From Ranitomeya imitator (lineage: Eukaryota), in assembly GCF_032444005.1 (NCBI RefSeq), contig NC_091283.1:168578001-168642000 (forward strand): a stretch of DNA of 64,000 nucleotides, written 5' to 3'. The position numbers were made by a program, and so were the translations under genes. Below are positions 3,676-41,253 of the stretch, piece after piece. Each line of letters begins with the position of its first letter. Position 1 is the first letter of the stretch. The notes beneath the pieces were generated by a model, which was not told the origin of the DNA, did not search any database, and saw nothing but the letters and a program-made list of their open reading frames with translations.

Positions 3676-6102
3676 TGCTTTCATCCTGGCCTCCAGTCAA
3701 TGTTCTAGTATTGGACCTGTTTCCTCCTGGATCGTTCCTGTGGCCTGCTGCTCTGCATAGCTAAGTTCTGCTTTGCTATTTTGTTTGCTGTTTTTTTCTG
3801 TCCAGCTTGTCTATTTGTTTTTTCCTGCTTGCTGGAAGCTCTGGGACGCAGAGGGTGTACCTCCGTGCCGTTAGTTCGGTACGGAGGGTCTTTTTGCACC
3901 CTTTGCGTGGTTTTTGTAGGGTTTTGTGTTGACCGCAAAGTTACCTTTCCTATCCTCGCTCTGTTCAGAAAGTCGGGCCTCACTTTGCTAAATCTATTTC
4001 ATCTCTACGTTTGTCTTTTCATCTTAACTCACAGTCATTATATGTGGGGGCTGCCTTTTCCTTTGGGGTATTTCTCTGAGGCAAGGTAGGCTTATTTTCT
4101 ATCTTCAGGCTAGCTAGTTTCTCAGGCTGTGCCGAGTTGCATAGGGAGCGTTAGGCGCAATCCACGGCTGCCTCTAGTGTGGTTGGAGAGGATTAGGGAT
4201 TGCGGTCAGCAGAGTTCCCACGTCTCAGAGCTCGTTCTATGTTTTTGGGTTATTGTCAGGTCACTGTATGTGCTCTGACCTCTATGTCCATTGTGGTACT
4301 GAATAACCTTATCATAACAATTTCCCATGCCTGCTGGTCTGAATGAGTCTATGTCTTTGGCCATTCAGATCGATCGACGCTTGCGTGAGCGTAAAGCTGT
4401 GCACCATTTGGCGGTACTGTCTGAGCATGGGCCTGAGCCTATGCAATGTGATAGGACTTTGACCAGAGCTGAACGGCAAGAACACAGACGTCGGAATGGG
4501 CTATGTTTTTACTGTGGTGATTCCACTCATGCTATCTCCGATTGTCCTAAGCGCACTAAGCGGTTCGCTAGGTCTGACACCATTGGTACGGTACAGTCTA
4601 AATTTCTATTGTCCGTTACTCTGATTTGTTCTTTGTCATCCTATTCTGTTATGGCATTTGTGGATTCAGGCGCTGCCCTGAATTTGATGGACTTGGAGTA
4701 TGCTAGGCGCTGTGGTTTTTTCTTGGAGCCCTTGCAGTATCCTATTCCATTGAGAGGAATTGATGCTACGCCTTTGGCCAAGAATAAGCCTCAGTAGTGG
4801 ACCCAATTGACCATGTGCATGGCTCCTGCACATCAGGAGGATATCCGCTTTCTGGTGTTGCATAATCTGCATGATGTGGTCGTTTTGGGGTTGCCATGGC
4901 TACAGGTTCATAATCCAGTATTGGACTGGAAATCTATGTCTGTGTCCAGCTGGGGTTGCCCAGGGGTACATGGTGATGTTCCATTTTTGGATATTTCATC
5001 TTCCACTCCTTCTGAAGTTCCAGAGTTTTTGTCGGATTATCGGGATGTATTTGATGAGCCCAAAGCCAGTGCTCTACCTCCTCATAGGGATTGCGATTGT
5101 GCAATTAATTTGATTCCTGGTAGTAAGTTTCCTAAGGGCCGATTGTTCAATTTATGTGTGCCAGAACACGCCGCTATGCGGAGTTATATAAAGGAGTCCT
5201 TGGAGAAAGGCCATATTCGCCCATCGTCATCACCGTTAGGAGCAGGGTTCTTTTTTTGTGGCCAAGAAGGATGGTTCTTTGAGACCTTGTATTGATTACC
5301 GCCTTCTCAATAAAATTACAGTCAAATTTCAGTATCCTTTGCCGTTGCTGTCTGATTTGTTTGCTCGTATTAAAGGGGCTAGTTGGTTCATCAAGATAGA
5401 TCTTCGAGGGGCGTATAATCTTGTGCGTATTAAACAGGGCGATGAATGGAAAACAGCATTTAATACGCCCGAGGGCCATTTTGAGTACGTGGTTATGCCA
5501 TTCGGGCTTTCCAATGCTCCATCAGTATTTCAGTCCTTTATGCATGACATCTTCCGAGAGTACCTGGATAAATTCCTGATTGTGTATTTGGATGGTATTT
5601 TGGTCTTTTCGGATGATTGGGAGTCTCATGTGAAGCAGGTCAGAATGGTGTTCCAGGTCCTTCGTGCGAATTCCTTGTTTGTGAAGGGGTCAAAGTGTCT
5701 CTTTGGAGTTCAGAAGGTTTAATTTTTGGGGTTCATTTTTCCCCCTTCTACTATCGAGATGGACCCTGTTAAAGGCCAAGCCATTTACGATTGGACTCAG
5801 CCGACATCTGTGAAGAGCCTGCAAAAGTTCCTGGGCTTTGCTAATTTTTATCGGCGCTTCATCGCTAATTTTTCTAGTGTTGCTAAACCGTTGACTGATT
5901 TGACCAAGAAGGGTGCTGATGTGGTCAATTGGTCTTCTGCAGCTGTAGAGGCTTTTCAGGAGTTGAAGCGTCGTTTTTCTTCTGCCCCTGTGTTGTGCCA
6001 GCCAGATGTTTCGCTCCCGTTTCAGGTTGAGGTTGATGCTTCTGAGATTGGAGCTGGGGCTGTTTTGTCGCAAAGAAGTTCTGATGGTTCGGTGATGAAG
6101 CC

Positions 6103-14496: not shown

Positions 14497-17400
14497 CATT
14501 ATACTTTATGGAGGACTATGGGCGTGAATTATACTTTATGAAGGACTGTGGGCGTGAATTATACCTTATGGATGACTATGGGCCATGCATTTTACTTTAT
14601 GGATGACTATGGGCTGTGCATTATACTTTATGGATGACCATGAGGTGCATTATACTTTATGGAGGACTATGGGCTGTGCATTATACTTTATGGATGATCA
14701 TGAGGTGCATTATACTATATGGTGGACTGTGGGCTGTGCATTATACTTTATGGATGACTATGGGCGTGAATTATACTTTATGGTGGTCTATGGGCTGTGC
14801 ATTATACTTTATGGATGACTATGGGTGTGAATTATACTTTATGAAGGACTGTGGGCTGTGCATTATACTTTATGGAGGACTATGGGCTGTGCATTATACT
14901 TTATGGAGGACTATGGGCTGTGCATTATACTTTATGGAGGACTATGGGCTGTGCATTATACTTTATGGATGACTATGAGCTGTGCATTAAACTTCATGGA
15001 AGACTATGGGCTGTGCATTATACTTTATTGATGATTATGGGCTGTGCATTATACTTTATGGAGGACTATTGGCTGTGCATTTTACTTTATGGATGACTAT
15101 GGGCTGTGCATTATACTTTATGGAGGACTATGGGCTGTGCGTTATACTTTATGGATGATCATGAGGTGCATTATACTATATGGTGGACTATGGGCTGTGC
15201 ATTATACTTTATGGATGACTATGGGCGTGAATTATACTTTATGAAGAACTATGGGCTGTGCATTATACTTTATGGATGACTATGGGCTGTGCATTATACT
15301 TTATGGAGGACTATGGGCTGTGCATTTTACTTTATGGATGACTATGGGCTGTGCATTATACTTTATGGAGGACTATGGGCTGTGCATTTTACTTTATGGA
15401 TGACTATGGGCTGTGCATTATACTTTATGGATGACTATGGGCTGTGCATTTTACTTTATGGATGACTATGGGCTGTGCATTATACTTTATACTTTATGAA
15501 TGATCATGAGGTGCATTATACTTTATGGAGGACTATGGGCTTTGCATTATACTTTATGGATGACTATGGGCGTGAATTATACTTTATGAAGGACTGTGGG
15601 CTGTGCTGTGCATTATACTTTATGGAGGACTATGGGCTGTGCATTATACTTTATGGATGATCATGAGGTGCATTATACTTTATGGAGGACTATGGGCTGT
15701 GCATTATACTTTATGGAGGACTATTTTCTGTGCATTTTACTTTATGGATGACTATGGGCTGTGCATTATACTTTAAGGATGACCATGAGGTGCATTATAC
15801 TTTATGGGGGACTATGGGTTGTGCATTATACTTTATGGAGGACTATGTGCAGTGCATTACACGTTATGGAGGACTATGGGCTGTGCATTATACTTTATGG
15901 ATGATCATGAGGTGCATTATACTATATGGTGGACTATGGGCTGTGCATTATACTTTATGGATGACTATGGGCGTGAATTATACGTTATGAAGAACTATGG
16001 GCTGTGCATTATACTTTATGGATGACTATGGGCTGTGCATTATACTTTATGGAGGACTATGGGCTGTGCATTTTACTTTATGGATGACTATGAGCTGTGC
16101 ATTATACTTCATGGAAGACTATGGGCTGTGCATTATACTTTATTGATGATTATTGGCTGTGCATTATACTTTATGGAGGACTATTGGCTGTGCATTTTAC
16201 TTTATGGATGACTATGGGCTGTGCATTATACTTTATGGAGGACTATGGGCTGTGCGTTATACTTTATGGATGATCATGAGGTGCATTATACTATATGGTG
16301 GACTATGGGCTGTGCATTATACTTTATGGATGACTATGGGCGTGAATTATACTTTATGAAGAACTATGGGCTGTGCATTATACTTTATGGATGACTATGG
16401 GCTGTGCATTATACTTTATGGAGGACTATGGGCTGTGCATTTTACTTTATGGATGACTATGGGCTGTGCATTATACTTTATGGAGGACTATGGGCTGTGC
16501 ATTTTACTTTATGGATGACTATGGGCTGTGCATTATACTTTATGGATGACTATGGGCTGTGCATTTTACTTTATGGATGACTATGGGCTGTGCATTATAC
16601 TTTATACTTTATGAATGATCATGAGGTGCATCATACTTTATGGAGGACTATGGGCTTTGCATTATACTTTATGGATGACTATGGGCGTGAATTATACTTT
16701 ATGAAGGACTGTGGGCTGTGCTGTGCATTATACTTTATGGAGGACTATGGGCTGTGCATTATACTTTATGGATGATCATGAGGTGCATTATACTTTATGG
16801 AGGACTATGGGCTGTGCATTATACTTTATGGAGGACTATTGACTGTGCATTTTACTTTATGGATGACTATGGGCTGTGCATTATACTTTAAGGATGACCA
16901 TGAGGTGCATTATACTTTATGGGGGACTATGGGTTGTGCATTATACTTTATGGAGGACTATGTGCAGTGCATTACACTTTATGGAGGACTATGGGCTGTG
17001 CATTATACTTTATTGATGATCATGAGGTGCATTATACTATATGGTGGACTATGGGCTGTGCATTATACTTTATGGATGACTATGGGCGTGAATTATACTT
17101 TATGAAGAACTATGGGCTGTGCATTATATTTTATGGATGACTATGGGCTGTGCATTATACTTTATGGAGGACTATGGGCTGTGCATTTTACTTTATGGAT
17201 GACTATGGGCTGTGCATTATACTTTATGGAGGACTATGGGCTGTGCATTTTACTTTATGGATGACTATGGGCTGTGCATTATACTTTATGGATGACTATG
17301 GGCTGTGCATTATACTTTATGGAGGACTATGGGCTGTGCATTTTACTTTATGGATGACTATGGGCTGTGCATTATACTTTATACTTTATGGATGATCATA

Positions 17401-20920: not shown

Positions 20921-21745
20921 TGTTGTGAATTCTGTTGTCGAGCTCCCTCCTGTGGTCATGGATGGTACTTCGGCTGGTTCTGTCCATGGGCTTCCTCTGG
21001 TGGTTGTGAGGGGGCTGTGGCTTCTGAGTTTCCTTCCACAGGTGACGAGGTTAATTCGTTAGCTGGCTGCTCTATTTAACTACACTTAGATCATTGCTCC
21101 ATGCCACCTGTCAATGTTCTAGTATTGGTCTAGTCCGCTCCTGGATCGTTCTGGTGACCTGTATTCTCCAGCAGAAGCTAAGTTCCTGCTTGTTTTTCTC
21201 TTGTTTGCTATTTTTCTGTCCAGCTTGCTATTTTTATTTTATTTTTGTCTTGCTTGCTGGAAGCTCTGGGACGCAGAGGGAGCGCCTCCGCACCATGAGT
21301 CGGTGCAGAGGGTCTTTTGCTCCCTCTGCGTGGTTTTTTTGTAGTTTTTGTGCTGACCGCAAAGTTACCTTTCCTATCCTCTGTCTGTTCAGTAAGTCGG
21401 GCCTCTCTTTGCTAAATCTATTTCATCTCTGTGTTTGTGATTTTCATCTTTACTCACAGTCATTATATGTGGGGGGCTGCCTTTTCCTTTGGGGAATTTC
21501 TCTGAGGCAAGGTAGGCTTTATTTTTCTATCTTTAGGGCTAGCTAGTTCCTTAGGCTGTGACGAGTTGCATAGGGAGCGTTAGGAGCAATCCACGGCTAT
21601 TTCTAGTGTGTGTGATAGGATTAGGGATTGCGGTCAGCAGAGTTCCCACGTCCCTGAGCTTGTCCTGTATTATTGTAACTATCAGGTCTTTCCGTGTGCT
21701 CTTAACCACCAGGTCCACATTTGTCCTAACCACCAGGTCATAACA
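20921..21745 (+). mobile_element. Solo LTR (D-type, 825 bp) with 6-bp TSD GATGTT
   Basis: TGTTGTG...CATAACA. GATGTT at 20915-20920 and 21746-21751. Closely similar to LTR 13684-14496. Confidence 0.93.
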
Positions 21746-22319
21746 GATGTTAGATATGGATGTAGAATGAATTGGGTGGTGGAGGAGGGTTCTAAGCCCC
21801 TGATAGCCTCCTCCCCCATCTTACAATTCATTATGGCACTAAAACAGACTTAAAATTTATGTATTGGGGATTGGGAGAAGAGGAGGTAAGGTGCATTGGA
21901 CACTTTATAATGAATTGAAAGGTGGGAGAGGACGCTGTCAGGGACTTGTAATGAATTGAGAGGGGGCGGAGGATGCTCAGTACCTGATGGTGTCTTCTCC
22001 AACCCCTAAATTCATTATGATGCTAATAAGTACTTATAATGAATGTGGGGGGGGGGGGGGAAGACACAGGACAGGGACTAAGGCTATGTGCACACGTTCA
22101 GGATTTGCAGGAGAAAATTCTACTGCATGTCCTAAAGTGTTGGCAGGAAGAATGCTGTGTAAAATGCATTTATTTTTTGCCACGTTTTTACCCCCACTCA
22201 TTAATGTGGATAAAAAATGCTGCAAGAATTTACATTCAGGTGCGTCACAGGAAGTTTTGAACTGTGGAAGGAAAAAATAAACATTTACTTTTCTTTCACA
22301 AAAATGTTCCTTTAGACCT

Positions 22320-24476: not shown

Positions 24477-25099
24477 TTCTCACTTGAATACAACTCTCAT
24501 TCTCCCAGCTTGCGCTGATCGCCGGCAGAGCAAGGGAGAATGATGAGAGCCGGAGAACAACTCTTACTGTTCTCTGTGTGCACGTGTACGGGACGTTTTG
24601 CAGCCCATGCTGATGGTAAAAAATGGACATGCCAGCGTGTTTTGCCCATGGACACACGGTCCATGGAAACACACTGACATGTGCACAGACCTATTCACTT
24701 GAATGGGTCTACGCCTGTCAGTGTCTCCAGTATGTGTGAAAACTGTCACCACATGCAGGACCAGCATTAGGGGCAGGCAGAGCAGGCAACTGCCTAGGGC
24801 CCCCTCTCCTCCAGGGGCCCCCAGCCACTGGCTTGCCGCGGCACACCGCTCGGCTGCTATGGGGCCCCTGAGTAGGAGGGACCCTACGCCACCCCCTGCA
24901 TTGCGCATTCAGCTTATTGGCATCATAGATGCCGGTTACAGTTGAAGGCAGGGATCACTCCCCCTCTGCCTCTGACTCAGCGTATGCCAGCAGTGGAGCT
25001 GATGAGACGCTGAGATGCTCTGAAAAAGCCAGAGCAGCAGGGAAACAATTAGGGAAGGTAAGTATTGTGTGTGTGTGTCTGCTGCACGATAATGTGTGC

Positions 25100-25442
25100 T
25101 TGGGGGCTGCATTATACTGTGTGTGGGGGTCGCACTATACTGTGCGTGGGGGCTGTACTATACTGTGTGTGTGAGGGGACTGCACTATACTGTGTGAGTG
25201 TGGGGGCTGCATTATACTATGGGTGTGGGGGGGGCTGCATTATACTATGTGTGGGTGGGGGCTGCATTATACTATGTGCGTGTGGAGGCTGCATTATACT
25301 ATGTGCGTGTGGAGGCTGCATTATACTGTTTGTGGGGGGATGCACTATACTGTGTGTGTTTGTGGGGGGCTGAATTATACTGTGTGCAGGGGCTGCTTTA
25401 TGCTGTGTGGGTGGGGATTCAGTATACTCTGAGGGGGCTGCT
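25100..25442. repeat. GGGGGCTGCATTATACT(GT)n minisatellite, left part (continues at 31131-31960)
   Basis: Direct reading. The array is split by element E. Confidence 0.85.
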
Positions 25443-28400
25443 TGTTGTGAATTCTGTGGCTGAGTTCACTTCTGTGGTCACAAGTGGTATTGCAGTCTCT
25501 GGGCTTCCTCCCTCAGGTGTTTTGGTGAGCTCGTTGGCTGCCTTGCTATTTAGCTCCACCTGAGTCTGTCTTCCTTGCTCCTTGTCAATGTTCCAGTGTT
25601 GGATCTGAGCTACTGCATCTTTCCTTGGGCCTGCTGCTCTGCTAGATAAGTGCTTCTAGTTTGTTTTCTGTTTTTTCTGTCCAGCTTGCTATTAACTTTT
25701 GCTGGAAGCTCTGAGAAGCAAAGGGGTGCACCGCCGTGCTGTTAGTTCGGCACGGTGGGTCTTTTTGCCCCTTTGCGTGGTTTTCGTTTTAGGGTTTTTT
25801 GTAGACTGCATAGTTCTCTTTGCTATCCTCGCTCTGTCTAGAATATCGGGCCTCACTTTGCTGAATCTATTTCATTCCTACGTTTGTCTTTTCATCTTGC
25901 TAACAGTCATTATATGTGGGGGCTGCCTATTCCTTTGGGGTATTTCTCTGAGGTAAGTCAGGCTTGTATTTCTATCTTCAGGCTAGTCAGCTCCTCAGGC
26001 AGTGCCGAGTTGCATAGGTAGTTGATAGGCGCAATCCACTGCTGCTTACAGTTGTGTGAGGATAGATCAGGTACTGCAGTCTACAGAGATTCCACGTCTC
26101 AGAGCTCGTCCTATTGTTTTGGGTTATTGCCAGATCTCTGTATGTGCGCTGATTACTGCACGCTGTGTTGCCTGATTGCCAGTCAGAACAGTACAAGGAG
26201 CCCTTCAATGATTTCCAATAGAGGGAAAAAAGAAATCCTGACATCATTTTTTTTTCTTAGCTCTGTCTTCAGTCTTTATTTTCCCCTAGACATTAGAGTG
26301 CTTCAGGACACAGCTGTGGACATGGATATTCAGGCTCTGTGCTCCTCAATGGATAATCTCGTTGTAAATGTACAAAAGATTCAAGATACTATTGATCAGA
26401 AATCGATGCTAGAACCAAGAATTCCGATTCCTGATTTGTTTTTTGGTGACAGAACTAAGTTCCTGAGCTTCAGAAATAATTGTAAGCTATTTTTGGCCTT
26501 GAAACCTCATTCTTCTGGTAATCCTATTCAACAGGTTTTGATTATTATTTCTTTTTTGCGCGGCGACCCACAGGACTGGGCGTTTTCTCTTGCACCAGGA
26601 GATTCTGCATTGAGTAATGTTGATGCATTTTTCCAGGCGCTGGGATTGCTTTACGATGAGCCTAATTCAGTGGATCAAGCTGAGAAAAATCTGCTGGCTT
26701 TATGCCAGGGTCAGGATGATGTAGAAGTATATTGTCAGAAATTTAGAAAATGGTCAGTACTCACTTTGTGGAATGAATCTGCACTAGCGGCTTTGTTCAG
26801 AAAGGGTCTCTCTGAAGCTCTTAAGGATGTAATGGTGGGATTTCCTATGCCTGCTGGTTTGAATGAGTCTATGTCCTTGGCCATTCAGATCGGTCGTCGC
26901 TTGCGCGAGCGTAAATCTGTGCACCATCTGGCGGTATTGTCTGAGAGTAAGCCTGAGCCTATGCAGTGCGACAGGACTATGACTAAAGTAGAACGGCACG
27001 AACACAGACGTCTGAACAGACTGTGTTTCTATTGTGGTGATTCTACTCATGCTATTTCTAATTGTCCTAAACGCACTAGGCGGTTCGATAGCTCTGCCGT
27101 TATTGGTACTGTACAGTCCAAATTCCTTTTGTCCATTACCTTAATGTGCTCTTTGTCATCGTATTCTGTCATGGCGTTTGTGGATTCAGGCGCTGCCCTG
27201 AATCTGATGGATTTGGATTATGCTAAACGTTGTGGATTTTTCTTGGAGCCTTTGCGGTGTCCTATTCCGTTGAGAGGAATTGATGCTACACCTTTGGCCA
27301 AGAATAAGCCTCAGTACTGGGCCCAGCTGACCATGTGCATGGCTCCTGCACATCAGGAAGTTATTCGCTTTTTGGTACTGCATAATTTGCATGATGTGGT
27401 CGTGTTGGGGTTGCCATGGCTACAAACCCATAATCCAGTATTGGATTGGAACTCTATGTCGGTAACCAGCTGGGGTTGTCAGGGAGTACATGGTGATGTT
27501 CCATTTTTGTCTATTTCGTCATCCATTCCTTCTGACATCCCAGAGTTCTTGTCGGACTTTCAGGATGTATTTGAAGAGTCCAAGTCTGATGCCCTACCTC
27601 CGCATAGGAATTGTGATTGTGCTATCGATTTGATTCCTGGTAGTAAATTCCCTAAGGGTCGTTTATTTAATTTGTCCGTACCTGAACACACCGCTATGCG
27701 CAGTTATGTGAAGGAGTCCCTGGAGAAGGGACATATTCGCCCATCGTCGTCACCATTGGGAGCAGGGTTCTTTTTTGTAGCCAAGAAGGATGGTTCGCTA
27801 AGACCGTGTATTGATTACCGCCTTCTTAATAAGATCACTGTTAAGTTTCAGTATCCCTTGCCATTGATTTCTGACTTGTTTGCTCGGATTAAGGGGGCTA
27901 GTTGGTTTACTAAGATTGATCTTCGTGGTGCGTATAATCTGGTGAGAATCAGGCAGGGAGATGAATGGAAAACGGCATTTAATACGCCCGAGGGTCATTT
28001 TGAGTATCTGGTGATGCCGTTCGGACTTGCCAATGCTCCATCTGTTTTTCAGTCTTTTATGCATGACATTTTCCGTGAGTATCTGGATAAATTCTTGATT
28101 GTTTACTTGGATGACATTTTGATCTTCTCAGATGATTGGGAGTCTCATGTGAAGCAAGTCAGAATGGTTTTCCAGGTACTGCGTGCTAATTCCTTGTTCG
28201 TGAAGGGATCAAAGTGTCTCTTCGGTGTGCAGAAAGTTTCATTTTTGGGGTTCATCTTTTCCCCTTCTACTATCGAGATGGATCCGGTTAAGGTTCAGGC
28301 CATCCAGGATTGGACTCAGCCGACATCTCTAAAAAGTCTGCAGAAATTCCTGGGCTTTGCTAATTTTTATCGTCGCTTCATCTGTAATTTTTCTAGCATT

Positions 28401-31130
28401 GCCAGACCATTGACCGATTTGACCAAGAAGGGTGCTGATTTGGTTAATTGGTCTTCTGCTGCCGTGGAAGCTTTTCAGGAGTTGAAGCGTCGTTTTTGCT
28501 GTGCCCCTGTGTTGTGTCAACCTGATGTTTCTCTTCCGTTCCAGGTCGAGGTTGATGCTTCTGAGATTGGTGCAGGGGCGGTTTTGTCACAGAGAGGTTC
28601 TGGTTGCTCAGTGTTCAAACCATGTGCTTTCTTTTCCAGGAAATTTTCTGCTGCTGAGCGTAATTATGATGTGGGCAACCGAGAGTTGCTGGCCATGAAG
28701 TGGGCATTCGAGGAGTGGCGTCATTGGCTTGAGGGTGCTAAGCATCGCGTGGTGGTTTTGACTGATCATAAGAACCTTACTTATCTTGAGTCTGCCAAGC
28801 GCTTGAATCCTAGACAGGCCCGTTGGTCGTTATTTTTTGCTCGTTTTGATTTTGTGATTTCATACCTTCCGGGCTCTAAAAATGTGAAGGCGGATGCTCT
28901 GTCTAGGAGTTTTGTGCCCGACTCTCCGGGGTTATCTGAGCCGGCGAGTATCCTCAAGGAAGGAGTCATTGTGTCTGCCATCTCCCCTGATTTGCGGAGA
29001 GTGTTGCAGAAATTTCAGGCTAATAAACCTGATCGTTGTCCGGCCGAGAAACTGTTCGTCCCTGATAGGTGGACTAGTAAAGTTATCTCTGAACTTCATT
29101 GTTCGGTGCTGGCCGGTCATCCAGGAATCTTTGGTACCAGGGAGTTGGTTGCTAGATCCTTCTGGTGGCCATCTCTGTCACGGGATGTGCGTGCTTTTGT
29201 GCAGTCCTGTGGAATTTGTGCTAGGGCTAAGCCCTGCTGTTCACGTGCCAGTGGGTTGCTTTTGCCCTTGCCGGTCCCGAAGAGGCCTTGGACACATATT
29301 TCGATGGATTTCATTTCTGACCTTCCCGTTTCTCAAAAAATGTCTGTCATTTGGGTGGTCTGTGATCGCTTTTCTAAAATGGTCCATCTGGTGCCCTTGG
29401 TTAAATTGCCTTTCTCCTCTGATTTGGTGCCTTTGTTCTTCCAGCATGTGGTTCGTTTACATGGCATTCCTGAGAATATTGTTTCTGACAGAGGTTCCCA
29501 GTTTGTCTCGAGGTTCTGGCGAGCCTTTTGTGGTAGGATGGGCATTGACCTATCTTTTTCCTCGGCCTTCCATCCTCAGACTAATGGCCAGACCGAACGA
29601 ACCAAGCAGACCTTGGAAACATATCTGAGATGTTTTGTTTCCGCTGACCAGGATGATTGGGTGTCATTTTTGCCGTTGGCTGAGTTCGCCCTTAATAATC
29701 GGGCCAGCTCGGCTACCTTGGTCTCTCCATTTTTCTGCAATTCTGGGTTCCATCCTCGGTTCTCTTCAGGACAGGTTGAGTCTTCGGACTGTCCTGGTGT
29801 GGATTATGTGGTGGACAGGTTGCAGCAGATCTGGACTCAGGTAGTGGACAATTTGACCTTGTCCCAGGAGAAGGCTCAGCTTTTCGCTAATCGCAGACGC
29901 CGTGTGGGACCCCGACTTCGTGTTGGGGATCTGGTTTGGTTATCTTCTCGTCATATACCTATGAAGGTTTCCTCTCCTAAATTTAAACCTCGTTTTATTG
30001 GTCCGTATAGGATTTCTGAGATTCTCAATCCGGTGTCTTTTCGTCTGACCCTCCCAGACTCCTTTTCCATACATAATGTATTCCATAGGTCGTTGTTGAG
30101 GAGATACGTGGCACCTATGGTTCCATCTGTGGAGCCTCCTGCCCCTGTTTTGGTGGAGGGGGAATTGGAGTATATTGTGGAGAAGATTTTGGATTCTCGT
30201 GTCTCTAGACGGAAACTCCAGTATCTGGTCAAATGGAAGGGTTATGCTCAGGAAGATAATTCCTGGGTTTTTGCCTCTGATGTCCATGCCCCAGATCTTG
30301 TTCGTGCCTTTCATGTGGCTCATCCTGGTCGGCCTGGGGGTTCTGGTGAGGGTTCGGTGACCCCTCCTCAAGGGGGGGGTACTGTTGTGAATTCTGTGGC
30401 TGAGTTCACTTCTGTGGTCACAAGTGGTATTGCAGTCTCTGGGCTTCCTCCCTCAGGTGTTTTGGTGAGCTCGTTGGCTGCCTTGCTATTCAGCTCCACC
30501 TGAGTCTGTCTTCCTTGCTCCTTGTCAATGTTCCAGTGTTGGATCTGAGCTACTGCATCTTTCCTTGGGCCTGCTGCTCTGCTAGATAAGTGCTTCTAGT
30601 TTGTTTTCTGTTTTTTCTGTCCAGCTTGCTATTAACTTTTGCTGGAAGCTCTGAGAAGCAAAGGGGTGCACCGCCGTGCTGTTAGTTCGGCACGGTGGGT
30701 CTTTTTGCCCCTTTGCGTGGTTTTCGTTTTAGGGTTTTTTGTAGACTGCATAGTTCTCTTTGCTATCCTCGCTCTGTCTAGAATATCGGGCCTCACTTTG
30801 CTGAATCTATTTCATTCCTACGTTTGTCTTTTCATCTTGCTAACAGTCATTATATGTGGGGGCTGCCTATTCCTTTGGGGTATTTCTCTGAGGTAAGTCA
30901 GGCTTGTATTTCTATCTTCAGGCTAGTCAGCTCCTCAGGCAGTGCCGAGTTGCATAGGTAGTTGATAGGCGCAATCCACTGCTGCTTACAGTTGTGTGAG
31001 GATAGATCAGGTACTGCAGTCTACAGAGATTCCACGTCTCAGAGCTCGTCCTATTGTTTTGGGTTATTGCCAGATCTCTGTATGTGCGCTGATTACTGCA
31101 CGCTGTGTTGCCTGATTGCCAGTCATAACA
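25443..31130 (+). mobile_element. Intact chromovirus-type gypsy retrotransposon (element E), 748-bp LTRs (25443-26190, 30383-31130), 6-bp TSD GCTGCT
   Basis: GCTGCT at 25437-25442 and 31131-31136. Only two LTR differences seen by eye. PPT lies before 30383. Single uninterrupted ORF. Confidence 0.96.
26322..30503 (+). CDS. Gag-Pol polyprotein (about 1393 aa): gag, CCHC knuckle, aspartic protease, RT, RNase H, integrase, chromodomain
   Basis: Lies within ORF 26022-30503, with ATG 26322 homologous to the gag start of C. Motifs CFYCGDSTHAISNC, FVDSGAA, YLDD, SDRGSQF and YLVKWKGY. The stop lies inside the 3' LTR. Confidence 0.93.
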   Translation: MDIQALCSSMDNLVVNVQKIQDTIDQKSMLEPRIPIPDLFFGDRTKFLSFRNNCKLFLALKPHSSGNPIQQVLIIISFLRGDPQDWAFSLAPGDSALSNVDAFFQALGLLYDEPNSVDQAEKNLLALCQGQDDVEVYCQKFRKWSVLTLWNESALAALFRKGLSEALKDVMVGFPMPAGLNESMSLAIQIGRRLRERKSVHHLAVLSESKPEPMQCDRTMTKVERHEHRRLNRLCFYCGDSTHAISNCPKRTRRFDSSAVIGTVQSKFLLSITLMCSLSSYSVMAFVDSGAALNLMDLDYAKRCGFFLEPLRCPIPLRGIDATPLAKNKPQYWAQLTMCMAPAHQEVIRFLVLHNLHDVVVLGLPWLQTHNPVLDWNSMSVTSWGCQGVHGDVPFLSISSSIPSDIPEFLSDFQDVFEESKSDALPPHRNCDCAIDLIPGSKFPKGRLFNLSVPEHTAMRSYVKESLEKGHIRPSSSPLGAGFFFVAKKDGSLRPCIDYRLLNKITVKFQYPLPLISDLFARIKGASWFTKIDLRGAYNLVRIRQGDEWKTAFNTPEGHFEYLVMPFGLANAPSVFQSFMHDIFREYLDKFLIVYLDDILIFSDDWESHVKQVRMVFQVLRANSLFVKGSKCLFGVQKVSFLGFIFSPSTIEMDPVKVQAIQDWTQPTSLKSLQKFLGFANFYRRFICNFSSIARPLTDLTKKGADLVNWSSAAVEAFQELKRRFCCAPVLCQPDVSLPFQVEVDASEIGAGAVLSQRGSGCSVFKPCAFFSRKFSAAERNYDVGNRELLAMKWAFEEWRHWLEGAKHRVVVLTDHKNLTYLESAKRLNPRQARWSLFFARFDFVISYLPGSKNVKADALSRSFVPDSPGLSEPASILKEGVIVSAISPDLRRVLQKFQANKPDRCPAEKLFVPDRWTSKVISELHCSVLAGHPGIFGTRELVARSFWWPSLSRDVRAFVQSCGICARAKPCCSRASGLLLPLPVPKRPWTHISMDFISDLPVSQKMSVIWVVCDRFSKMVHLVPLVKLPFSSDLVPLFFQHVVRLHGIPENIVSDRGSQFVSRFWRAFCGRMGIDLSFSSAFHPQTNGQTERTKQTLETYLRCFVSADQDDWVSFLPLAEFALNNRASSATLVSPFFCNSGFHPRFSSGQVESSDCPGVDYVVDRLQQIWTQVVDNLTLSQEKAQLFANRRRRVGPRLRVGDLVWLSSRHIPMKVSSPKFKPRFIGPYRISEILNPVSFRLTLPDSFSIHNVFHRSLLRRYVAPMVPSVEPPAPVLVEGELEYIVEKILDSRVSRRKLQYLVKWKGYAQEDNSWVFASDVHAPDLVRAFHVAHPGRPGGSGEGSVTPPQGGGTVVNSVAEFTSVVTSGIAVSGLPPSGVLVSSLAALLFSST

Positions 31131-31596
31131 GCTGCTTTATACTTTGGGGGGCTGCATTATACTCCAAGGGGGCTGTTTTATACTCTGGTGGGCTGCATTA
31201 TACTGTGTGTGCGGGGTGCTGCATTGTACACTGAGGGCACTGCATTATACTGTGTGGTGGGGCTGCATTATACTGTGTGTGGGGGGCTGCATTATACTGT
31301 GTGTGAGGGGGCTGAACTATACTACTGTGTGTTTGTGGGGGGCTGAATTATACTGTGGGGGCTGCATTATTCTGTGCATGTGGGGCTACGTTATACTCTG
31401 AGGGGGCTGCATTATGCTCTGAGGAGAGTACGTTATACTCTGAAAGGGCTGCGTTATACTCTGACGTGGCGGCATTATACTGTGTGTGGAGGCTGGATTA
31501 CACTCTGAGGGGCTACATTACACCCTGAGGGGGCTGCATTTTACTCTGAGGGGACTACACTATACTCTATGAGGGGGGCTGAAGTATACTCTAAGG

Positions 31597-31782
31597 CAGT
31601 GTTCCCCAAATCTGGTCCTCAAGAGCCACCAACATGTCATGTTTTCAGGATTTCCTTAGTATTGCACAGGAGATAATTGCATCACCTGGACAGGCAAGCA
31701 TTCAATCACCTGTGCAATACTAAGGAAATCCTGAAAACATGACCTGTTAGTGGCTCTTGAGGATCGGAGTTGGGGAACACTG
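31597..31782. mobile_element. hAT MITE (186 bp)
   Basis: TIR CAGTGTTCCCCAA/TTGGGGAACACTG. Perfect 8-bp TSD CTCTAAGG (31589-31596, 31783-31790). Palindromic interior. Confidence 0.92.
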
Positions 31783-31978
31783 CTCTAAGGGGCTGCATTA
31801 TACTCTATGAGGCGGGCTGTAGTATATTCTGAGTGGGCTGCAGTACACTCTGAGGGGGGCTGCATTATACTCTATCAAGGACCTTGGGGAGTGCATTTTG
31901 CTATATGTACTATTTGGGATTTGCATTATACTGTATTGAGGACTATCTGTACCAATCATTCTTCCTCAGGCACAGTAA

Positions 31979-32351
31979 GGGTAGGTGCACACGGTAAGTG
32001 AACAAGGCGGATTGGATGCTGCGTACTTGTGCAGCGTCCAGATGTTACAGCATAGTGGATGGGATTTCAAGAAATCTCATGCCCACTATGCGTGCACAGA
32101 CGCCAGCAGCTCACCCGCAGAGATGGACATACGACGCGTCTCTCCAGACCGCAGCATGTCTATTTATCTTGCGGAGATGCGAGCCTTTGCAAGATAAATT
32201 TTACCCGTACACTGTATTGGATGCCGTGAATCCTCACGGTTCAATGAACACATGTGGAATCACCTGTGTTCAATAGCCGGCAGCGCTTTGGACACAGTGA
32301 ACATGTGCTGCTCCCAAAGCGCTGCCAATTACTGAAGGTGTGCACCTACCC
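31979..32351. mobile_element. MITE (373 bp)
   Basis: 14-bp TIR GGGTAGGTGCACAC/GTGTGCACCTACCC. The TSD is ambiguous (TAA vs TAG). Confidence 0.75.
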
Positions 32352-32556
32352 TAGGGAAACAAACATCGGACGACTTCAATATTGTCGCTCACGCTCGTTT
32401 AGTGTGGTCTGAACTTAGCGCTTGTAAGTGCAACAGAAATATTTCTGTGTGATGGTGCAATATGTGAGCATTTGAGGCCCCACTTTAAACTTTTGCCCGG
32501 GGCCCCACTTTGTCTAAAACCGTCCCTGAGCACGTTTCGGAAACAGTGCTTTGCTT

Positions 32557-32976
32557 GTAGTAATTTAATGCTATCACTAGGTGGTAGTAGAGATTAATGT
32601 ATTAGCATTGATGCATGGAATTGCCTAGATTTATCACCAGGCGGCAGCAAAAAACATGTGCTCTGCATGTAGTAATTTAATTCTACCACTAGGTGGTAGT
32701 AGAGATTAATGTATTAGTATTAATGCATGTGATTACCTAGCTTAATCACCTAGTGGCAGCAAATTAAAACTTGCTCTGCATGTAGTAACTTAATTGCACC
32801 ACTAGGTGGTAGTAGAGATTATTGTATTAGTATTAATGCATGTGATTACCTAGCTTAATCACCAGGTGGCAGCAAATAAAAACTTGCTCTGCATGTAGTA
32901 ATTTAATTGCGCCACTAGGTGGTAGTAGAGATTTTTGTTGTATGTAGTAATTTCTTTCTGCCACTAGATGCCAGTA
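32557..32976 (+). promoter_or_regulatory. ~113-bp tandem repeat (3.5 copies) containing 8 same-orientation CTCF-like motifs; candidate insulator
   Basis: Motifs start near 32574, 32634, 32686, 32746, 32799, 32859, 32911 and 32960 (e.g. CCACTAGGTGGTAG, TCACCAGGTGGCAGCA), against the CTCF core CCASYAGRKGGCR. Binding is not shown. Confidence 0.5.
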
Positions 32977-33124
32977 GACTACAGTAAAACGCTGCATTAT
33001 TATTCGTCGATTTACTTCGCACGTTGATTTAGATTTATAATTTACTTGCATTTTTTCAGTTTAGAATACAGAAATCACAACTATCAAAATGTCATTTTAT
33101 TACTTATGTGTTAAATCCACGCTT

Positions 33125-33435
33125 AGTCCCGCCTCTTTATATGCTTAATTGGCCAATACATCTGGCATTCAGGTCAGTCGTTTAGCTGATTGGTGGCGTG
33201 TAACGTTCCCTGACTTCCTGGTTTTTGATTGGACCAGCTGTCGGATTCTTTCCTATGATTGGCTGGTTGCTGCTGTTTCTGTCCGTGACGCGCATAGTTA
33301 TTCGTCTCTGATTAGTCAGGATTCTCATATTCTGTTATGTCATTGGTCGGTTTTCTCTGTTCTTTAATTGGGCTCCAGGATGCAGTTCTGTGTTGTGATT
33401 GGTGGAATTTCCCTATCCTCAGTTCTTACTGGTTG
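33125..33435 (+). promoter_or_regulatory. Putative PORCN promoter with clustered CCAAT boxes
   Basis: ATTGG at 33148, 33189, 33228, 33258, 33342, 33367 and 33398, CCAAT at 33153, and a GC-box-like CCCGCC near 33128. It lies 200-500 bp upstream of the first coding exon. Confidence 0.5.
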
Positions 33436-33660
33436 GTTACATGCAGCAGTGATAAGAGCATCCCCCTGCCGGGGAGAATGGCAGCAGTGTCTGCAGCAGG
33501 GATGGCATAGAGGAGGCACAGAGGAGCTGCAGCTGGTAGTGACTGCTCTGCCATGTTCTTATGTCCCAGGTGTCTACACATTCATCTATGTAAGTGATGG
33601 GATTTCTCTTTGTTTCTGCAGGTCGGGACCACTGAGCCCCCAGATTTCCAGGACCAAAAA

Positions 33661-34046
33661 ATGGCTGCCTTCAGCCGCAGAGAATTTTATGAACAGCTCC
33701 TTCATGGCTGCATTCTCCCCACCGCCCTGCAGGGTCTGGAGCAGATCTGGGTGCTGCTGCTGATGTGTCTGGGCTGCCGGCTGCTGTGGAGGTTCGGTAA
33801 GGTCACGGTCCAGGAGCACAAACAAGACGGGGGACGAGATAGGCAGGAACAAGTGCACGTAGCGCCGAAAACCACACATCGAAATACACGGCCGCTATGT
33901 GTGCCGCAGTCGTGCGTGTGCCGCAGGTGCGCGTGTGCCGCAGTCGTGCGTACCGCAGTCGGTTGTGTGCGTGCCGCATTTGTGTGTGTGCGTGTGCACG
34001 CCGCAGTCATGTGTGTGAGCGTGCTGCAGTCGTGTGAGTGCCGCAG

Positions 34047-34080
<34 letters not shown>

Positions 34081-37000
34081 TCCGCTGTCAAAAATGTGCA
34101 CATTACAGAGCTCCTCACATAGGGAGAAAGGCTGGAATGTCCTCCGGAAGCTAAGTTGAAGGGTCTGCAGTACGTATTACCCACACCGATACTCTGTAAC
34201 AAACTCCAGAGTGTGCAGAGGTTTGTGCTGCAGATGTGTGTAGTGTCAGAAGTGTTGGTTCTGTACAGGTAGTCAGCCGTAGAGCAGATTGTTTCTTCAC
34301 TGAGCGAGCAGAGATCTGTTTCTACTCTGTATGCTCTGTGTGTGTGTGCTTTCCCGCTTGGTGTCTGTGTGTGCGTGCGCTCTCCTGCACGGTGTGTCGG
34401 TGTGTGTGTGCTCTCCCGCGTGGCGTGTGTGTGTGCTGTCCCGCGCGGCGTCTGTGTGTGTGCTCTCCTGCACCGTGTGTGCGTGCGTTCTCCTGCGTGG
34501 TGTCTGTGTGTGTGCTCTCCTGCGTGGTGTCTGTGTGTGTGTGCTTTCCTGCGTGGTGTCTGTGTGTGTGTGCTTTCCTGCACTGTGTGTGTGTGTGCTC
34601 TCCTGCACTGTGTGTGCGCTCTCCTGCACTGTGTGTGCGCTCTCCTGCACTGTGTGTGCGCTCTCCTGCACTGTGTGTGCGCTCTCCTGCACTGTGTGTG
34701 CGCTCTCCTGCACTGTGTGTGCGCTCTCCTGCACTGTGTGTGCGCTCTCCTGCACTGTGTGTGCGCTCTCCTGCACTGTGTGTGCGCTCTCCTGCACTGT
34801 GTGTGCGCTCTCCTGCACTGTGTGTGCGCTCTCCTGCACTGTGTGTGCGCTCTCCTGCACTGTGTGTGCGCTCTCCTGCACTGTGTGTGCGCTCTCCTGC
34901 ACTGTGTGTGCGCTCTCCTGCACTGTGTGTGCTCTCCTGCACTGTGTGTGTGTGTGCTCTCCTGCACTGTGTGTGTGTGTGCTCTCTCCCGCGCGGTGTG
35001 TGTGTGTGTGCTCTCCCGCGCGGTGTCTGTGTGCTCTCCTGCACTGACTGTGTGTGTGTGTGTGCGCTCCCGTGCGGTGTCTGTATGTGCGTGCTCTCCC
35101 GCCCTGTGAGCTGTAGCTTCTGATGTTTCCCTTTCCCCATCGCTCTCCGCAGGCCTCCCTTCCCACATGAAGCACCTGTTCACCATTGCCGGGGGCTTCT
35201 TCTGCCTCTACCACTTCTTCCAGCTGCAGATGATTTGGGTGGTCCTCCTCAGCCTGCTGTGCTACCTGGTGCTCTTCTTGTGCCGTCACTCGCACCATCG
35301 CGGGGTCCTGCTGTCCATCACTATCCTCATCTATCTGCTGATGGGGTGAGAGCCGCCGTTCTGCGCCTCACAGTGCGGCACACGGGTCACATCGCTGCCA
35401 CTGTACAGACACTCACTGATGCCTTTGTCTCCTCCTTCCAGGGAGATGCACATGGTGGACACCATCAGCTGGCACAAGATGCGAGGTTGGTCTTCCATCC
35501 CGGACCCCTTTGTTTCTGGGTTGACCTTTGCCTGTCTGATGCTTCTCCTTTTCTCTTTCTCGCCATGAAGGTGCACAGATGATCGTGGCCATGAAAGCCG
35601 TGTCTTTGGGCTTCGATGTGGATCGTGGCAGTGTGCGCTCCATTCCATCTCCGGTGGAGTTCATGGGATATGTCTACTTTGTGGGCACCGTCATCTTCGG
35701 CCCTTGGATAAGTTTTACCAGTTACTTGGATGCAGTAAATGGGCGGAAAATGGTGAGGATAATGGCGGGAACTGGGGGCTGATGGGAGCGGATAGTGAAG
35801 AAAAATGAATTGGATCAGAGGTTGATTTGTGTCGTATGCATTGTCAGGAGGGATGGGGCATGCTCAACGGCAATATGCCCGATCTGTCCTGAAAGGAGAG
35901 AACCCATCCGCAGAGGTGCCTGGCAGCAGCCTACTCCCCATAGACAGCACCCGCCTGCTTGGTCCCGCCTGTGCAGGTGTATGGGGGGCTCCAGGGGGTC
36001 AGCAGCTATTTGAGGTGTATGGCCACTTGCGGAGTTGTCTGTGCCCCTCTTAGTGATCAGTGTCGCGTGTCCTGGAGCGGCGTCCACTGAATCTGCCGCT
36101 TACTCATTACATTCATTGTGCGGCATTCTCCCAGTATGGCCGTGCAGGAAACCTGCGGCGGGGCATTGGGGGCTTCCCCCCAATATGTATTTCCGGTGTG
36201 CTCTCATTCCTCCTTCTCCGCAGACTCTCAGCTGGTTCCGGCGGGTGGTCCGCAGCCTGATCCTCTGCGTATTCTGCCTCCTGGTGTCCACCTGCATTTC
36301 TCCATATCTCTTCCCTTACTTCATCCCCCTCTACGGAGACCGGCTGCTGAGAAAGTGAGTACAAAGCACCAGCAGGAGCCCAGTTTTCCAGGTTCCATAG
36401 TTTATTTCTGGTTCCTGACGGTAAACCGCTTCTTTCCATCCGGAGACCCATATTGCTCTGATGTTCTGTAACGAGCCATGGCGCTGTGTCAGGGGGATTG
36501 CAGCCTCTGGATGATTCACTGACAGCAAGCAGAGGTCTTAATGCTGAAAAATTGAACCTTGGTCATTTAGAAAGTTGCAGATGATTCATTATACGTCAGT
36601 TTCTCAGAGCCGGTAGCAGCAGGTGACAGTGCTCTGCAGGATATGGCCAGAGGTGACGGGTGTGCCGATTTCCTGCAATCATAAAGCAGCATTTCCGAGA
36701 CCCCCGACCCCTCCACTGAACCCAGATTGTGATAATTCTCCCCCATGATCCAACCACAAGATCTGTGTGAACATTCACACATTTAGGATTTGCCTGTGGC
36801 AAAAATACACGAGGGGGGGGGGGTCTAGTGAAGGATGTGACCCCCGACCTCGCATGTAGTGACGGCACTGGGGGTCTCGTCCTTCCTGGAAATCGCTGCT
36901 GTCCTGCTCTTCATCCTTACTATGTATTTCTCAGGATCTTTTCTTTGTTCCTTTTCCTTTATGTTCCCCCGGATTCTCCAGTAAGAAACGTAAAGCCAGG

Positions 37001-40296: not shown

Positions 40297-41253
40297 AAGG
40301 GAGACATCTGTAAGACTCGGTGCCATCTGCTGGCACCTGCCGCGGTGTGACCAATCTCTGCCACGCAGACCAGAGCTGGAGCCTTTACAGCTGGCATAAT
40401 GGGTGCATAGGGGCATCGAATGACCAAGATGTCCCCTCATGGAGGACGTTGTTAGGAACAGCCGCCTCCGCCACATCATCCTATATATCCTCTGGGCGTA
40501 ATACGGGCGGATAAAATTAGGGTCAGAAAGGTCGTGACCTCTCCATCTGCCTGGATTCCACGAATAAAGTTGTTTTGTAAGAATTGTGTTATGTGTAAGA
40601 TCCATAAAGTCTAGTGACACGGCCACCATTGCAGCACATTCTTTATTCCAGAAGCCACACAACATCACGTATGGACAGGAAAGCTCCACTGCACGTATGT
40701 GCCCTCCGGGCTGGAGGGCTCACGGCCAGGTCCTCATTCACACACGGTGCGGTCCCTCACGTGCGCTCATCCACTAACGCTCTCACACTCGGACCCCGCG
40801 GTCGGCTCGCACCAGGAGAAAGGGTCTGACAGGAAGACTGTGGCGGTGCCAGGACATAAAGGTTTTGCTGGTCTGCACGTGCTCGGTGGAGGTGTGATGG
40901 GTTCCGCGTTTTCTGCGACATGAACCCAGCAACGTCTCCAGTGCCATTCGCAGAAAGGACTGGAAATTACCGCTTCGCTCTCGGCGGCTGTCCTTGGGGG
41001 GAGATAAGGGGGCAGGAAGAAGGTCAGATGTTACTAAAAGGTGTCCGAGTAGATGCATAGGAAGTAATATCCGTGTTATGGAGTTGGATCTGCACGAGGC
41101 CTGCATACCCCACCACACCCTATGTCGCCATAAGTCTCCCTCAGTAGTGCAGCCTCAGGCTTAGGGCCTGTAACATTAAATGGTCAGATCACCACATAGA
41201 GGAAGGCACTATAGCCTTAATAGCCATCTTTTCTAGCATCTCACTTCTTTTAA

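What the first reader, a model, noticed from the sequence alone, without database searches (positions are those of the whole stretch)
32557..32976. Tandem array of about 8 co-oriented CTCF-like motifs exactly at the repeat-block/gene-cluster boundary
Seen: a 113-bp unit, repeated 3.5 times, carries two motifs per unit (CCACTAGGTGGTAG and TCACCAGGTGGCAGCA types) spaced about 55-60 bp apart in otherwise AT-rich DNA. It starts about 30 bp after the last transposon end and stops about 150 bp before the PORCN promoter. Established: the CTCF core is CCASYAGRKGGCR, and clustered co-oriented sites mark strong boundaries. Inference: tandem duplication amplified an insulator that shields PORCN from a 32-kb transposon and satellite block. 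Several copies carry a C-to-T change that may weaken binding.
Basis: partly seen in the sequence, partly recalled or inferred. Interest (0 to 1): 0.7.

Follow-up and report, generated by a model that had tools for sequence, protein, structure and literature searches.

The report
CTCF-motif minisatellite upstream of frog PORCN
A short tandem repeat just upstream of a poison frog's PORCN gene really does carry seven same-direction matches to the binding motif of the genome-folding protein CTCF. It looks like an ordinary repeat expansion of one older site, and its proposed role as an insulator is possible but untested.

Summary
Window 32547-32933 is a 113-bp tandem repeat (3.4 copies, 88% matches). 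Each unit is two diverged 56-57-bp subunits (A and B), and a degenerate fifth A-like subunit runs to 32983. Seven of the eight subunit cores score p<1e-5 with the vertebrate CTCF matrix, all on the + strand, pointing towards PORCN (ATG 33661). The eighth is weak.

- No site matches the 13-mer consensus perfectly.
- None has the upstream (ZF9-11) motif that most tested insulator sites carry.
- Within each subunit type, the cores vary as much as the spacers do.
- Tandem repeats cover 16% of the window, and shuffling predicts tens of CTCF-motif arrays by chance in the DNA already scanned. The scan has noted at least 11 such arrays elsewhere in this genome.
- The array units (84-94% identical) look older than two of the three Gypsy insertions upstream (LTR pairs 100% and 99.3% identical).

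Points in favour: the two motifs in one unit cannot be two chance events, so one motif-bearing segment was duplicated and both copies kept the core. The only perfect consensus site in the window lies convergently, just after the PORCN stop codon.

The parts
32547..32933 (+). Higher-order minisatellite: 113-bp unit x 3.4, each unit an A subunit followed by a B subunit of about 56-57 bp
   Evidence: TRF period 113, 88% matches. Copies are 83-94% identical to the reference. Unit-to-unit identities are 94%, 87% and 84%.
32939..32983 (+). Degenerate fifth A-like subunit at the 3' edge of the array
   Evidence: 64% identity to the A reference copy. nhmmer E 0.15.
32571..32589 (+). CTCF-like core, A type, edge copy (TCACTAGGTGGTAG)
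   Evidence: 13.4 bits, p 8e-6
32631..32649 (+). CTCF-like core, B type, with GGCGGC in place of GGTGGC
   Evidence: 13.4 bits, p 8e-6
32683..32701 (+). CTCF-like core, A type (CCACTAGGTGGTAG)
   Evidence: 18.0 bits, p 5e-7. One mismatch to the IUPAC consensus.
32743..32761 (+). Damaged B core (CACCTAGTGG). It reads as the reverse complement of the A core.
   Evidence: 4.9 bits on +, 6.3 bits on -
32796..32814 (+). CTCF-like core, A type
   Evidence: 15.9 bits
32856..32874 (+). CTCF-like core, B type (TCACCAGGTGGCAG)
   Evidence: 17.8 bits, p 6e-7
32909..32927 (+). CTCF-like core, A type
   Evidence: 16.7 bits
32958..32976 (+). CTCF-like core in the degenerate last subunit (CCACTAGATGCCAG)
   Evidence: 15.1 bits
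33148..33402 (+). Cluster of eight CCAAT/ATTGG boxes: the presumed PORCN promoter. The transcription start was not determined.
   Evidence: Pattern count. Sequence read.
33661..33797 (+). PORCN first coding exon
   Evidence: The ORF 33610-34122 matches human PORCN 7ura_A residues 6-62, E 2.7e-18. A later exon also matches PORCN.
40318..40336 (-). Strongest CTCF-matrix hit in the window and its only perfect IUPAC match, about 25 bp after the PORCN stop codon. It is convergent with the array.
   Evidence: 19.6 bits. Zero mismatches. The last PORCN exon ends at 40293.
30374..31131 (+). 3' LTR of the nearest Ty3/Gypsy (chromodomain) retrotransposon copy
   Evidence: 99.3% identical to 25433-26191. 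Pfam RVT_1, RNase H, rve and Chromo domains lie between the two LTRs.
31131..31949 (.). Minisatellite with 19-24-bp units (related repeat at 25066-25441), interrupted by a hairpin MITE at 31596-31783. The Gypsy copy inserted into it.
   Evidence: TRF. Inverted repeat of 79 nt, 92% complementary. The same repeat lies on both sides of the Gypsy copy.
31978..32352 (.). MITE-like element bounded by 22-nt inverted termini
   Evidence: Inverted pair I2, 86% complementary. No second copy in the window.

Best explanation
This is a lineage-specific minisatellite that multiplied one older CTCF-type site.

Inferred history: a segment of about 56 bp carrying a CTCF core was duplicated once, giving the A and B subunits. 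The two diverged almost to saturation outside the core. Later the 113-bp A+B pair was copied head-to-tail about 3.5 times by slippage or unequal exchange, leaving degenerate edges.

The result is seven good ZF3-7 core motifs, 49-60 bp apart, free of CpG, all pointing towards PORCN. They sit in AT-rich DNA between a growing Gypsy/satellite block and the CCAAT-rich PORCN promoter.

Inferred function: CTCF probably occupies some units. If so, the array would act as a promoter-proximal anchor facing right. It would stall cohesin arriving from the PORCN side and pair with the perfect reverse-strand site just after the PORCN stop codon.

Shown here: the repeat structure, the motif quality and orientation, the lack of the upstream motif, and the relative ages. 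Not shown: binding, insulation, or selection for copy number.
For: - Repeat structure.
- Motif scores and shared strand.
- Use of the mammalian matrix in a frog is justified. Core and upstream motifs are almost identical in lamprey, chicken and human (PMC5504073). The standard CTCF motif (HOMER scan) shows convergent orientation at X. tropicalis TAD borders (PMC8270788).
- Shared ancestry of A and B. GCATGT sits at the same distance from the core in both, and flanks match at 16 of 38 positions against 11.5 expected (P 0.07). Two same-strand hits never arose in 200,000 shuffles of the unit.
- The core is kept better than the flanks between A and B: 11/14 against 16/38.
- The array is ordinary for this DNA. 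The window holds 23 tandem arrays covering 16% of it. Chance predicts 0.04 motif-bearing arrays per window. Earlier notes on the same genome report many similar arrays, and their follow-ups read them as ordinary expansions.
- The convergent perfect site lies after the PORCN stop codon.
Against: - No occupancy data of any kind were available.
- The core-versus-flank contrast is biased, because the motif is the reason the array was picked. It is also weak (Fisher P 0.03 for the 14-bp core, 0.09 for the 19-bp matrix window).
- A/B homology outside the core is only suggestive (P 0.07).
- I could not test whether the unit is a fragment of a dispersed element. If it is, the 'one older local site' step would be wrong.
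- A 7.4-kb convergent pair is small for a CTCF/cohesin loop and may be coincidence.
Confidence: 0.6

Rival explanations
1. One reading: the array is a selected, amplified insulator or heterochromatin barrier. Its multiple CTCF sites shield the PORCN promoter and the gene cluster from the 32-kb retrotransposon and satellite block.
For: - Seven co-oriented strong cores lie exactly between the repeat block and the promoter.
- Insulation grows with the number of tandem sites (10.1101/2020.07.07.192526).
- Forward sites sit on the right side of domain borders, and divergent patterns mark borders (PMC7422557). All hits of 12.5 bits or more in the upstream block are on the - strand.
- The upstream elements carry chromodomain integrases, which from memory target heterochromatin.
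- The core was retained in both A and B subunits.
Against: - There is no ZF9-11 upstream motif at any site: best 5-6 of 10 matches, the same as background. Most characterised insulator and barrier sites have it, and it is needed for strong blocking (PMC12885311, PMC11417384).
- Tandem arrays of strongly bound non-boundary sites did not insulate.
- Deleting the CTCF-rich Firre repeat left its TAD border in place (PMC5899154 title and abstract).
- Variable columns are not depleted in the cores within A or B copies, and two of three B cores are damaged.
- Two of the three upstream Gypsy copies (LTR pairs 100% and 99.3% identical) are younger than the array units (84-94%).
- The - strand hits in the block are mostly one transposon-borne word with G at the near-invariant A of matrix position 9.
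- CpG observed/expected shows no step at the array. The MITE-like element just upstream is as CpG-rich as the promoter.
Confidence: 0.12
2. The unit is a piece of a dispersed transposon or hairpin repeat family that already carried the motif. The array grew from one inserted copy, as earlier follow-ups concluded for a 57-bp and a 26-bp CTCF-motif array elsewhere in this genome.
For: - Earlier notes s1-294811 and s1-288135 describe transposon-arm origins for similar arrays, one with a 57-base unit close to the 56-57-bp subunit here. I did not check these notes.
- The array sits in a run of small elements: a hairpin MITE, a MITE-like element with inverted termini, and a possible terminal repeat ending at 32528.
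Against: - There is no other copy of the unit or subunit in the 64-kb window. The best outside hit is 27 bp of AT-rich spacer.
- No inverted termini bracket the array.
- A sequence look-up in the scan's notes found nothing.
Confidence: 0.15
3. The resemblance to CTCF is incidental and CTCF does not bind. One possibility is that the near-palindromic GGTGG/CAGGTGG core is what makes the repeat unstable, as a minisatellite-core or Chi-like sequence next to a promoter. Another is that a different factor reads it: the B core contains the E-box CAGGTG, bound by ZEB, SNAI and E-proteins.
For: - Every site departs from the consensus at a strongly weighted position. None is perfect, and three have two or more mismatches.
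- Both cores are near-palindromes (CCAC-TAG-GTGG and CACC-A-GGTG). One copy has flipped to the reverse complement of the A core.
- Chance predicts roughly 14-31 CTCF-motif arrays in the 755 windows scanned so far.
- From memory: Jeffreys' minisatellite core contains GGTGGGCAGG, and in vertebrates without PRDM9 recombination concentrates at promoters.
Against: - Scores of 13-18 bits (p about 1e-5 to 5e-7) are in the range normally used to call CTCF sites.
- A tested insulator site has the core CCACTAGGGGGAGACA, close to the A type (PMC12885311).
- The cores lack CpG (one exception, GGCGGC at 32631), so methylation would not block binding.
- For this AT-rich unit only 70 of 200,000 shuffles reach 13 bits.
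Confidence: 0.2

Closest known systems
CTCF-binding tandem repeats of mammals (DXZ4, Firre, the H19/IGF2 imprinting control repeats, DXPas34)
   Same: Head-to-tail repeats in which each unit carries a CTCF site in one orientation, in some cases next to a promoter. DXZ4 binds CTCF and diverges fast in sequence while keeping the binding (PMC3491370). Dxz4 orientation controls long-range contacts (10.1101/165340).
   Different: Those are kilobase units or long arrays with shown CTCF occupancy and allele- or X-specific regulation. Here the units are 113 bp, there are only 3.4 copies, no CpG lies in the cores and no binding data exist. H19 and DXPas34 are recalled from memory, not checked here.
Clustered CTCF sites at TAD boundaries and synthetic tandem CTCF-site insulators
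   Same: Several same-direction sites within a few hundred bp. Insulation rises with site number (10.1101/2020.07.07.192526). Clustering gives robustness (PMC10497529 and PMC6945661 abstracts).
   Different: Natural clusters are usually unrelated sites spread over kilobases. Tested units are 139 bp or longer with native flanks, and flanks decide whether insulation occurs. Here the spacing is 49-60 bp, about one CTCF footprint (from memory), and the upstream motif is absent.
Transposon-borne waves of CTCF sites (for example SINE B2 in rodents)
   Same: Lineage-specific multiplication of a CTCF motif by a repeat mechanism. That CTCF sites spread by retrotransposition in mammals is stated in PMC5504073.
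   Different: Those spread by transposition to dispersed places. Here copying is local and tandem, and no dispersed copy was found in the window.
Other CTCF-motif minisatellites noted by this scan in the same poison-frog genome
   Same: Co-oriented CTCF-type motifs in tandem units of 26-57 bp, several abutting gene starts (NUDT18, AXDND1, ATPAF2/GID4, PRODH2, TERF2 intron 1). Follow-ups read them as ordinary expansions with an untested insulator role.
   Different: This one is among the smallest, at eight motifs. It has a two-subunit higher-order unit and is AT-rich. It also has a perfect convergent partner at the 3' end of the adjacent gene.

Membership tests
CTCF binding site | Match to the 15-19-bp core motif read by zinc fingers 3-7 | tested here: met
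Five are within one mismatch of CCASYAGRKGGCR and none is perfect.
CTCF binding site | Upstream motif for zinc fingers 9-11 (CAGCTGTTCC / CTGCAGTTCC-like, 2-10 bp upstream). It is present in 13-15% of sites but in most insulator sites. | tested here: not met
   Best 5-6 of 10 matches at any linker of 0-12 bp, equal to the window background. Consensus taken from PMC12885311.
CTCF binding site | Occupancy by CTCF in vivo or in vitro | not testable with these tools
Insulator / domain boundary | Cluster of CTCF sites with forward sites on the right of the border and a divergent pattern across it | tested here: inconclusive
   The array is + and all hits of 12.5 bits or more in the upstream block are -. 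Five of those are one transposon-borne word with a poor base at matrix position 9. The rule is from PMC7422557.
Insulator / domain boundary | Enhancer blocking, or a drop in contact frequency or chromatin marks across the element | not testable with these tools
   The only proxy was CpG observed/expected, which shows no step at the array.
Insulator / domain boundary | Evolutionary conservation of the site(s) at the orthologous place | not testable with these tools
The other collections hold no frog genomes.
Minisatellite (higher-order tandem repeat) | Head-to-tail copies of a 10-100+ bp unit, with the most similar copies inside and degenerate copies at the edges | tested here: met
   Period 113, 3.4 copies. 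Unit 2 versus 3 is 94% identical, unit 1 versus 2 is 87%, and the last subunit is 64%.
Minisatellite (higher-order tandem repeat) | Copy-number variation between individuals | not testable with these tools
Dispersed transposon-derived repeat | Further copies with unrelated flanks; terminal inverted repeats or target-site duplication | tested here: inconclusive
   No other copy in the window and no bracketing inverted repeat. The rest of the genome could not be searched.

The most novel reading that the evidence does not exclude
In this very large, repeat-laden frog genome, local tandem duplication is a regular route by which CTCF sites multiply at gene starts, playing the part that SINE waves play in mammals. 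Here it would have built a seven-site anchor that, with the perfect reverse site behind the stop codon, encloses PORCN in its own small loop. That loop would keep a dosage-sensitive Wnt-secretion gene active beside a still-growing block of chromodomain retrotransposons.
Probability: 0.1. Interest if true: 0.6.

Novelty: new member of a known kind. Interest (0 to 1): 0.3.

Why it matters
If CTCF binds the array, the locus offers a natural copy-number series for a practical question: do closely packed same-direction CTCF sites without the upstream motif add up to a stronger loop anchor or barrier? The setting is a young retrotransposon block against a housekeeping-type promoter. Together with the other arrays noted in this genome, it could show whether tandem duplication is a general source of new CTCF sites in amphibians. 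As it stands, it is one more minisatellite with a suggestive motif. The base-rate calculation here shows that such arrays are expected by chance at this genome's repeat density.

Tried and rejected
I did not look for the stretch in public DNA collections by another tool. There is therefore no depth-based copy number, no polymorphism data and no transcription start.
No DNA of the stretch was sent to any collection scan.
The big protein searches were therefore pointless and were not run.
4. Rfam gave no match in the window.
5. nhmmer with the eight-subunit alignment returned nothing, and the single-unit query found only the array itself.
6. I searched for the candidate transposon terminus ending at 32528. 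It occurs only once in the window, so it remains unverified.
7. I tested the conserved TGCATGT block as a CTCF upstream motif. It lies 15 bp from CCA, outside the reported linker range, and does not match the consensus, so I rejected that reading.
8. A look-up in the scan's notes by sequence was blank and carries no weight. One by a bare motif word was not accepted.
9. PORCN was checked exon by exon by reference only.

Full report
**What is there.** The sequence at 32547-32933 is a tandem repeat with period 113, 3.4 copies and 88% matches. The repeat finder puts three full 113-nt copies in register, at 83-94% identity to the reference. It also finds five copies of a 64-nt segment, the last of which (32924-32987) is only 64% identical. 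Cutting the array at its motif cores gives eight subunits of two kinds. The A kind reads GCATGTAGTAATTTAATTGCA-CCACTAGGTGGTAGTAGAGATT. The B kind reads GCATGTGATTACCTAGCTTAA-TCACCAGGTGGCAGCAAATAAA. Subunits of the same kind are 78-95% identical. A and B are only 43-55% identical. The array is therefore a higher-order repeat (A+B) x 3.4, plus one decayed A-like subunit. Unit 2 versus unit 3 is 94% identical, and unit 1 versus the others is 84-87%. This is the usual picture of fresher copies inside and older copies at the edge. The DNA is 35-37% G+C and almost free of CpG.

Its column sums run from 913 down to 908, as in the published matrix, but the matrix should be re-checked with FIMO.
- Seven of the eight cores score 13.4-18.0 bits (p 8e-6 to 5e-7), all on the + strand.
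- The eighth (32743, CACCTAGTGG) scores 4.9 bits on + and 6.3 bits on -. It has become the reverse complement of the A core.
T replaces the first C of CCA in all B copies and in the first A copy. T replaces the C of GGC in all A copies.

Using a mammalian matrix in a frog is justified. The core and upstream motifs found by ChIP-seq are almost identical in lamprey, chicken and human (PMC5504073). In Xenopus tropicalis, motifs located with the standard HOMER scan show the convergent orientation at TAD borders (PMC8270788).

**More than chance?** Locally, yes. Seven hits of 13 bits or more in 405 bp compare with about 0.008 expected, and none of the other 22 tandem arrays in the window has a hit. 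But the seven are copies of each other, so the real question is how many independent events there were. Shuffling the 113-bp unit 200,000 times gives a 13-bit hit in 70 cases and two same-strand hits in none. The A and B motifs are therefore not two accidents. One motif-bearing segment was duplicated, which fits the shared GCATGT block at the same distance from the core. It also fits flank identity of 16/38 against 11.5 expected (P 0.07).

At genome scale the picture changes. Tandem repeats fill 16% of the window. Shuffling every array's unit predicts 0.041 arrays per window with a 13-bit motif and 0.018 with a 15-bit motif. That is about 31 and 14 in the 755 windows of this genome already scanned. 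The scan's notes hold at least 11 'CTCF tandem array' findings in this same poison-frog genome, and the follow-ups read them as ordinary expansions, some seeded by transposon arms. A CTCF-motif minisatellite is thus not in itself evidence of function.

**Signs of constraint.** Between the A and B consensus, the 14-bp core keeps 11 positions and the flanks keep 16 of 38. Fisher P is 0.03 for the core and 0.09 for the whole 19-bp matrix window. This points the right way but is biased, because the motif is the reason the array was chosen. Within A copies and within B copies, variable columns are no rarer inside the matrix window than outside: 4/19 against 11/38, and 4/19 against 8/38. Two of the three B cores carry damaging changes. 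So there is weak evidence that the core was kept over the long A/B divergence, and none that individual copies are protected now.

**Upstream motif.** Well-studied insulator and barrier sites usually carry a second motif for zinc fingers 9-11 (CAGCTGTTCC / CTGCAGTTCC-like) a few bp upstream of the core. It raises affinity and is needed for strong enhancer blocking (PMC12885311; PMC11417384). None of the eight sites has it. The best match is 5-6 of 10 at any linker of 0-12 bp, the same as random places in the window. The conserved TGCATGT block lies 15 bp from CCA and does not match. In a mouse reporter, arrays of six or fifteen strongly bound CTCF sites from non-boundary regions did not insulate at all, although insulation did rise with the number of boundary-derived sites (10.1101/2020.07.07.192526). 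Motif number alone therefore predicts little.

**Surroundings.** Downstream, eight CCAAT/ATTGG boxes lie at 33148-33402. The ORF 33610-34122 contains the PORCN N-terminus from the ATG at 33661 (7ura_A residues 6-62, E 2.7e-18). A later exon also matches PORCN, and the last exon ends at 40293. The transcription start is unknown, so 'about 150 bp before the promoter' really means 172 bp before the first CCAAT box and 685 bp before the ATG.

Upstream, the window is self-repetitive up to 31949.
- It holds several Ty3/Gypsy copies with chromodomain integrases, all on the + strand, and a 31-bp satellite of about 106 copies.
- The nearest Gypsy copy has LTRs at 25433-26191 and 30374-31131. It inserted into a minisatellite of short (about 20-27-bp) units that continues on both sides of it.
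- Next come a hairpin MITE (31596-31783), a MITE-like element with 22-nt inverted termini (31978-32352), and 170 bp ending in a possible terminal repeat at 32528. That terminal repeat occurs only once in the window.

The array does sit between the repeat block and the promoter. However, minisatellites also fill PORCN intron 1 (33899-35102), so its position is not exceptional for this DNA.

**Relative ages.** The three Gypsy LTR pairs are 100%, 99.3% and 91.8% identical. The array units are 94%, 87% and 84% identical. If rates are comparable and gene conversion is ignored, the array is older than two of the three insertions. It was not amplified in answer to them. At most it was already there while the block grew. 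These figures are given only for dating.

**Orientation and a possible partner.** All seven motifs point towards PORCN. By the loop-extrusion rule, the ZF3/N-terminal side faces downstream of the core, and forward sites lie on the right of borders (PMC12885311; PMC7422557). The array would therefore stall cohesin coming from the PORCN side and form the left edge of a domain to its right. It is not the orientation that best blocks anything arriving from the transposon side. The strongest matrix hit in the window, and its only perfect consensus match, lies on the - strand at 40318-40336, about 25 bp after the PORCN stop codon. The gene is thus bracketed by a convergent pair 7.4 kb apart. This is suggestive, but it may be coincidence and is small for a CTCF loop. 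The - strand hits in the upstream block are mostly one transposon-borne word with G at the near-invariant A of matrix position 9. The 'divergent border' pattern is therefore weak evidence.

**Verdict.** The most likely reading (0.6) is an ordinary lineage-specific higher-order minisatellite that multiplied one older CTCF-type site. Some units are probably bound, and a promoter-proximal anchoring role is possible.

| Rival reading | Probability |
|---|---|
| Selected-insulator reading | about 0.12 |
| Transposon-fragment origin | about 0.15 |
| No CTCF binding (motif incidental, or read by another factor such as an E-box protein) | about 0.2 |

These readings overlap in part.

**What could not be done.** Genome-wide copy number, polymorphism, expression and orthologous loci are therefore untested. 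Similar arrays have been found before by this scan on other DNA of the same genome.

Noticed in passing
window 40318-40336 (- strand): The only perfect CCASYAGRKGGCR match and the strongest CTCF-matrix hit in the window (19.6 bits). It lies about 25 bp after the PORCN stop codon, convergent with the upstream array.
   Followed up: partly
window 6102-6923 / 11095-11916; 25433-26191 / 30374-31131; 13684-14499 / 20921-21748: Three Ty3/Gypsy chromodomain retrotransposon copies, all on the + strand, with LTR pairs 100%, 99.3% and 91.8% identical. The block upstream of PORCN has kept growing recently. The copy nearest PORCN inserted into a minisatellite of short (about 20-27-bp) units that continues on both sides of it.
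   Followed up: partly
window 3526, 6122, 11115, 13703, 20940 (- strand): The same CTCF-like word TGACCACAGGAGGGAGC recurs in the Gypsy copies. It scores 12.5-14.4 bits despite a G at the near-invariant A of the core, so the elements carry a weak CTCF-like motif in one orientation.
   Followed up: no
window 33148-33402: Eight CCAAT/ATTGG boxes within 255 bp, six of them reading ATTGG and five as GATTGG, upstream of the PORCN start codon. This is an unusually dense candidate NF-Y promoter.
   Followed up: no
window 33899-35102: PORCN intron 1 starts with over 1 kb of GC-rich minisatellites (17-27-bp units) with CpG observed/expected up to 1.3. These create long spurious ORFs on both strands.
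   Followed up: no
window 32743-32761: One B-type core reads CACCTAGTGG, the exact reverse complement of the A-type core CCACTAGGTG. The near-palindromic core has in effect flipped strand in this copy.
   Followed up: partly
window 31596-31783: A hairpin MITE with 79-nt arms, 92% complementary, separated by a 30-nt loop. It is inserted in the minisatellite just downstream of the nearest Gypsy LTR.
   Followed up: no
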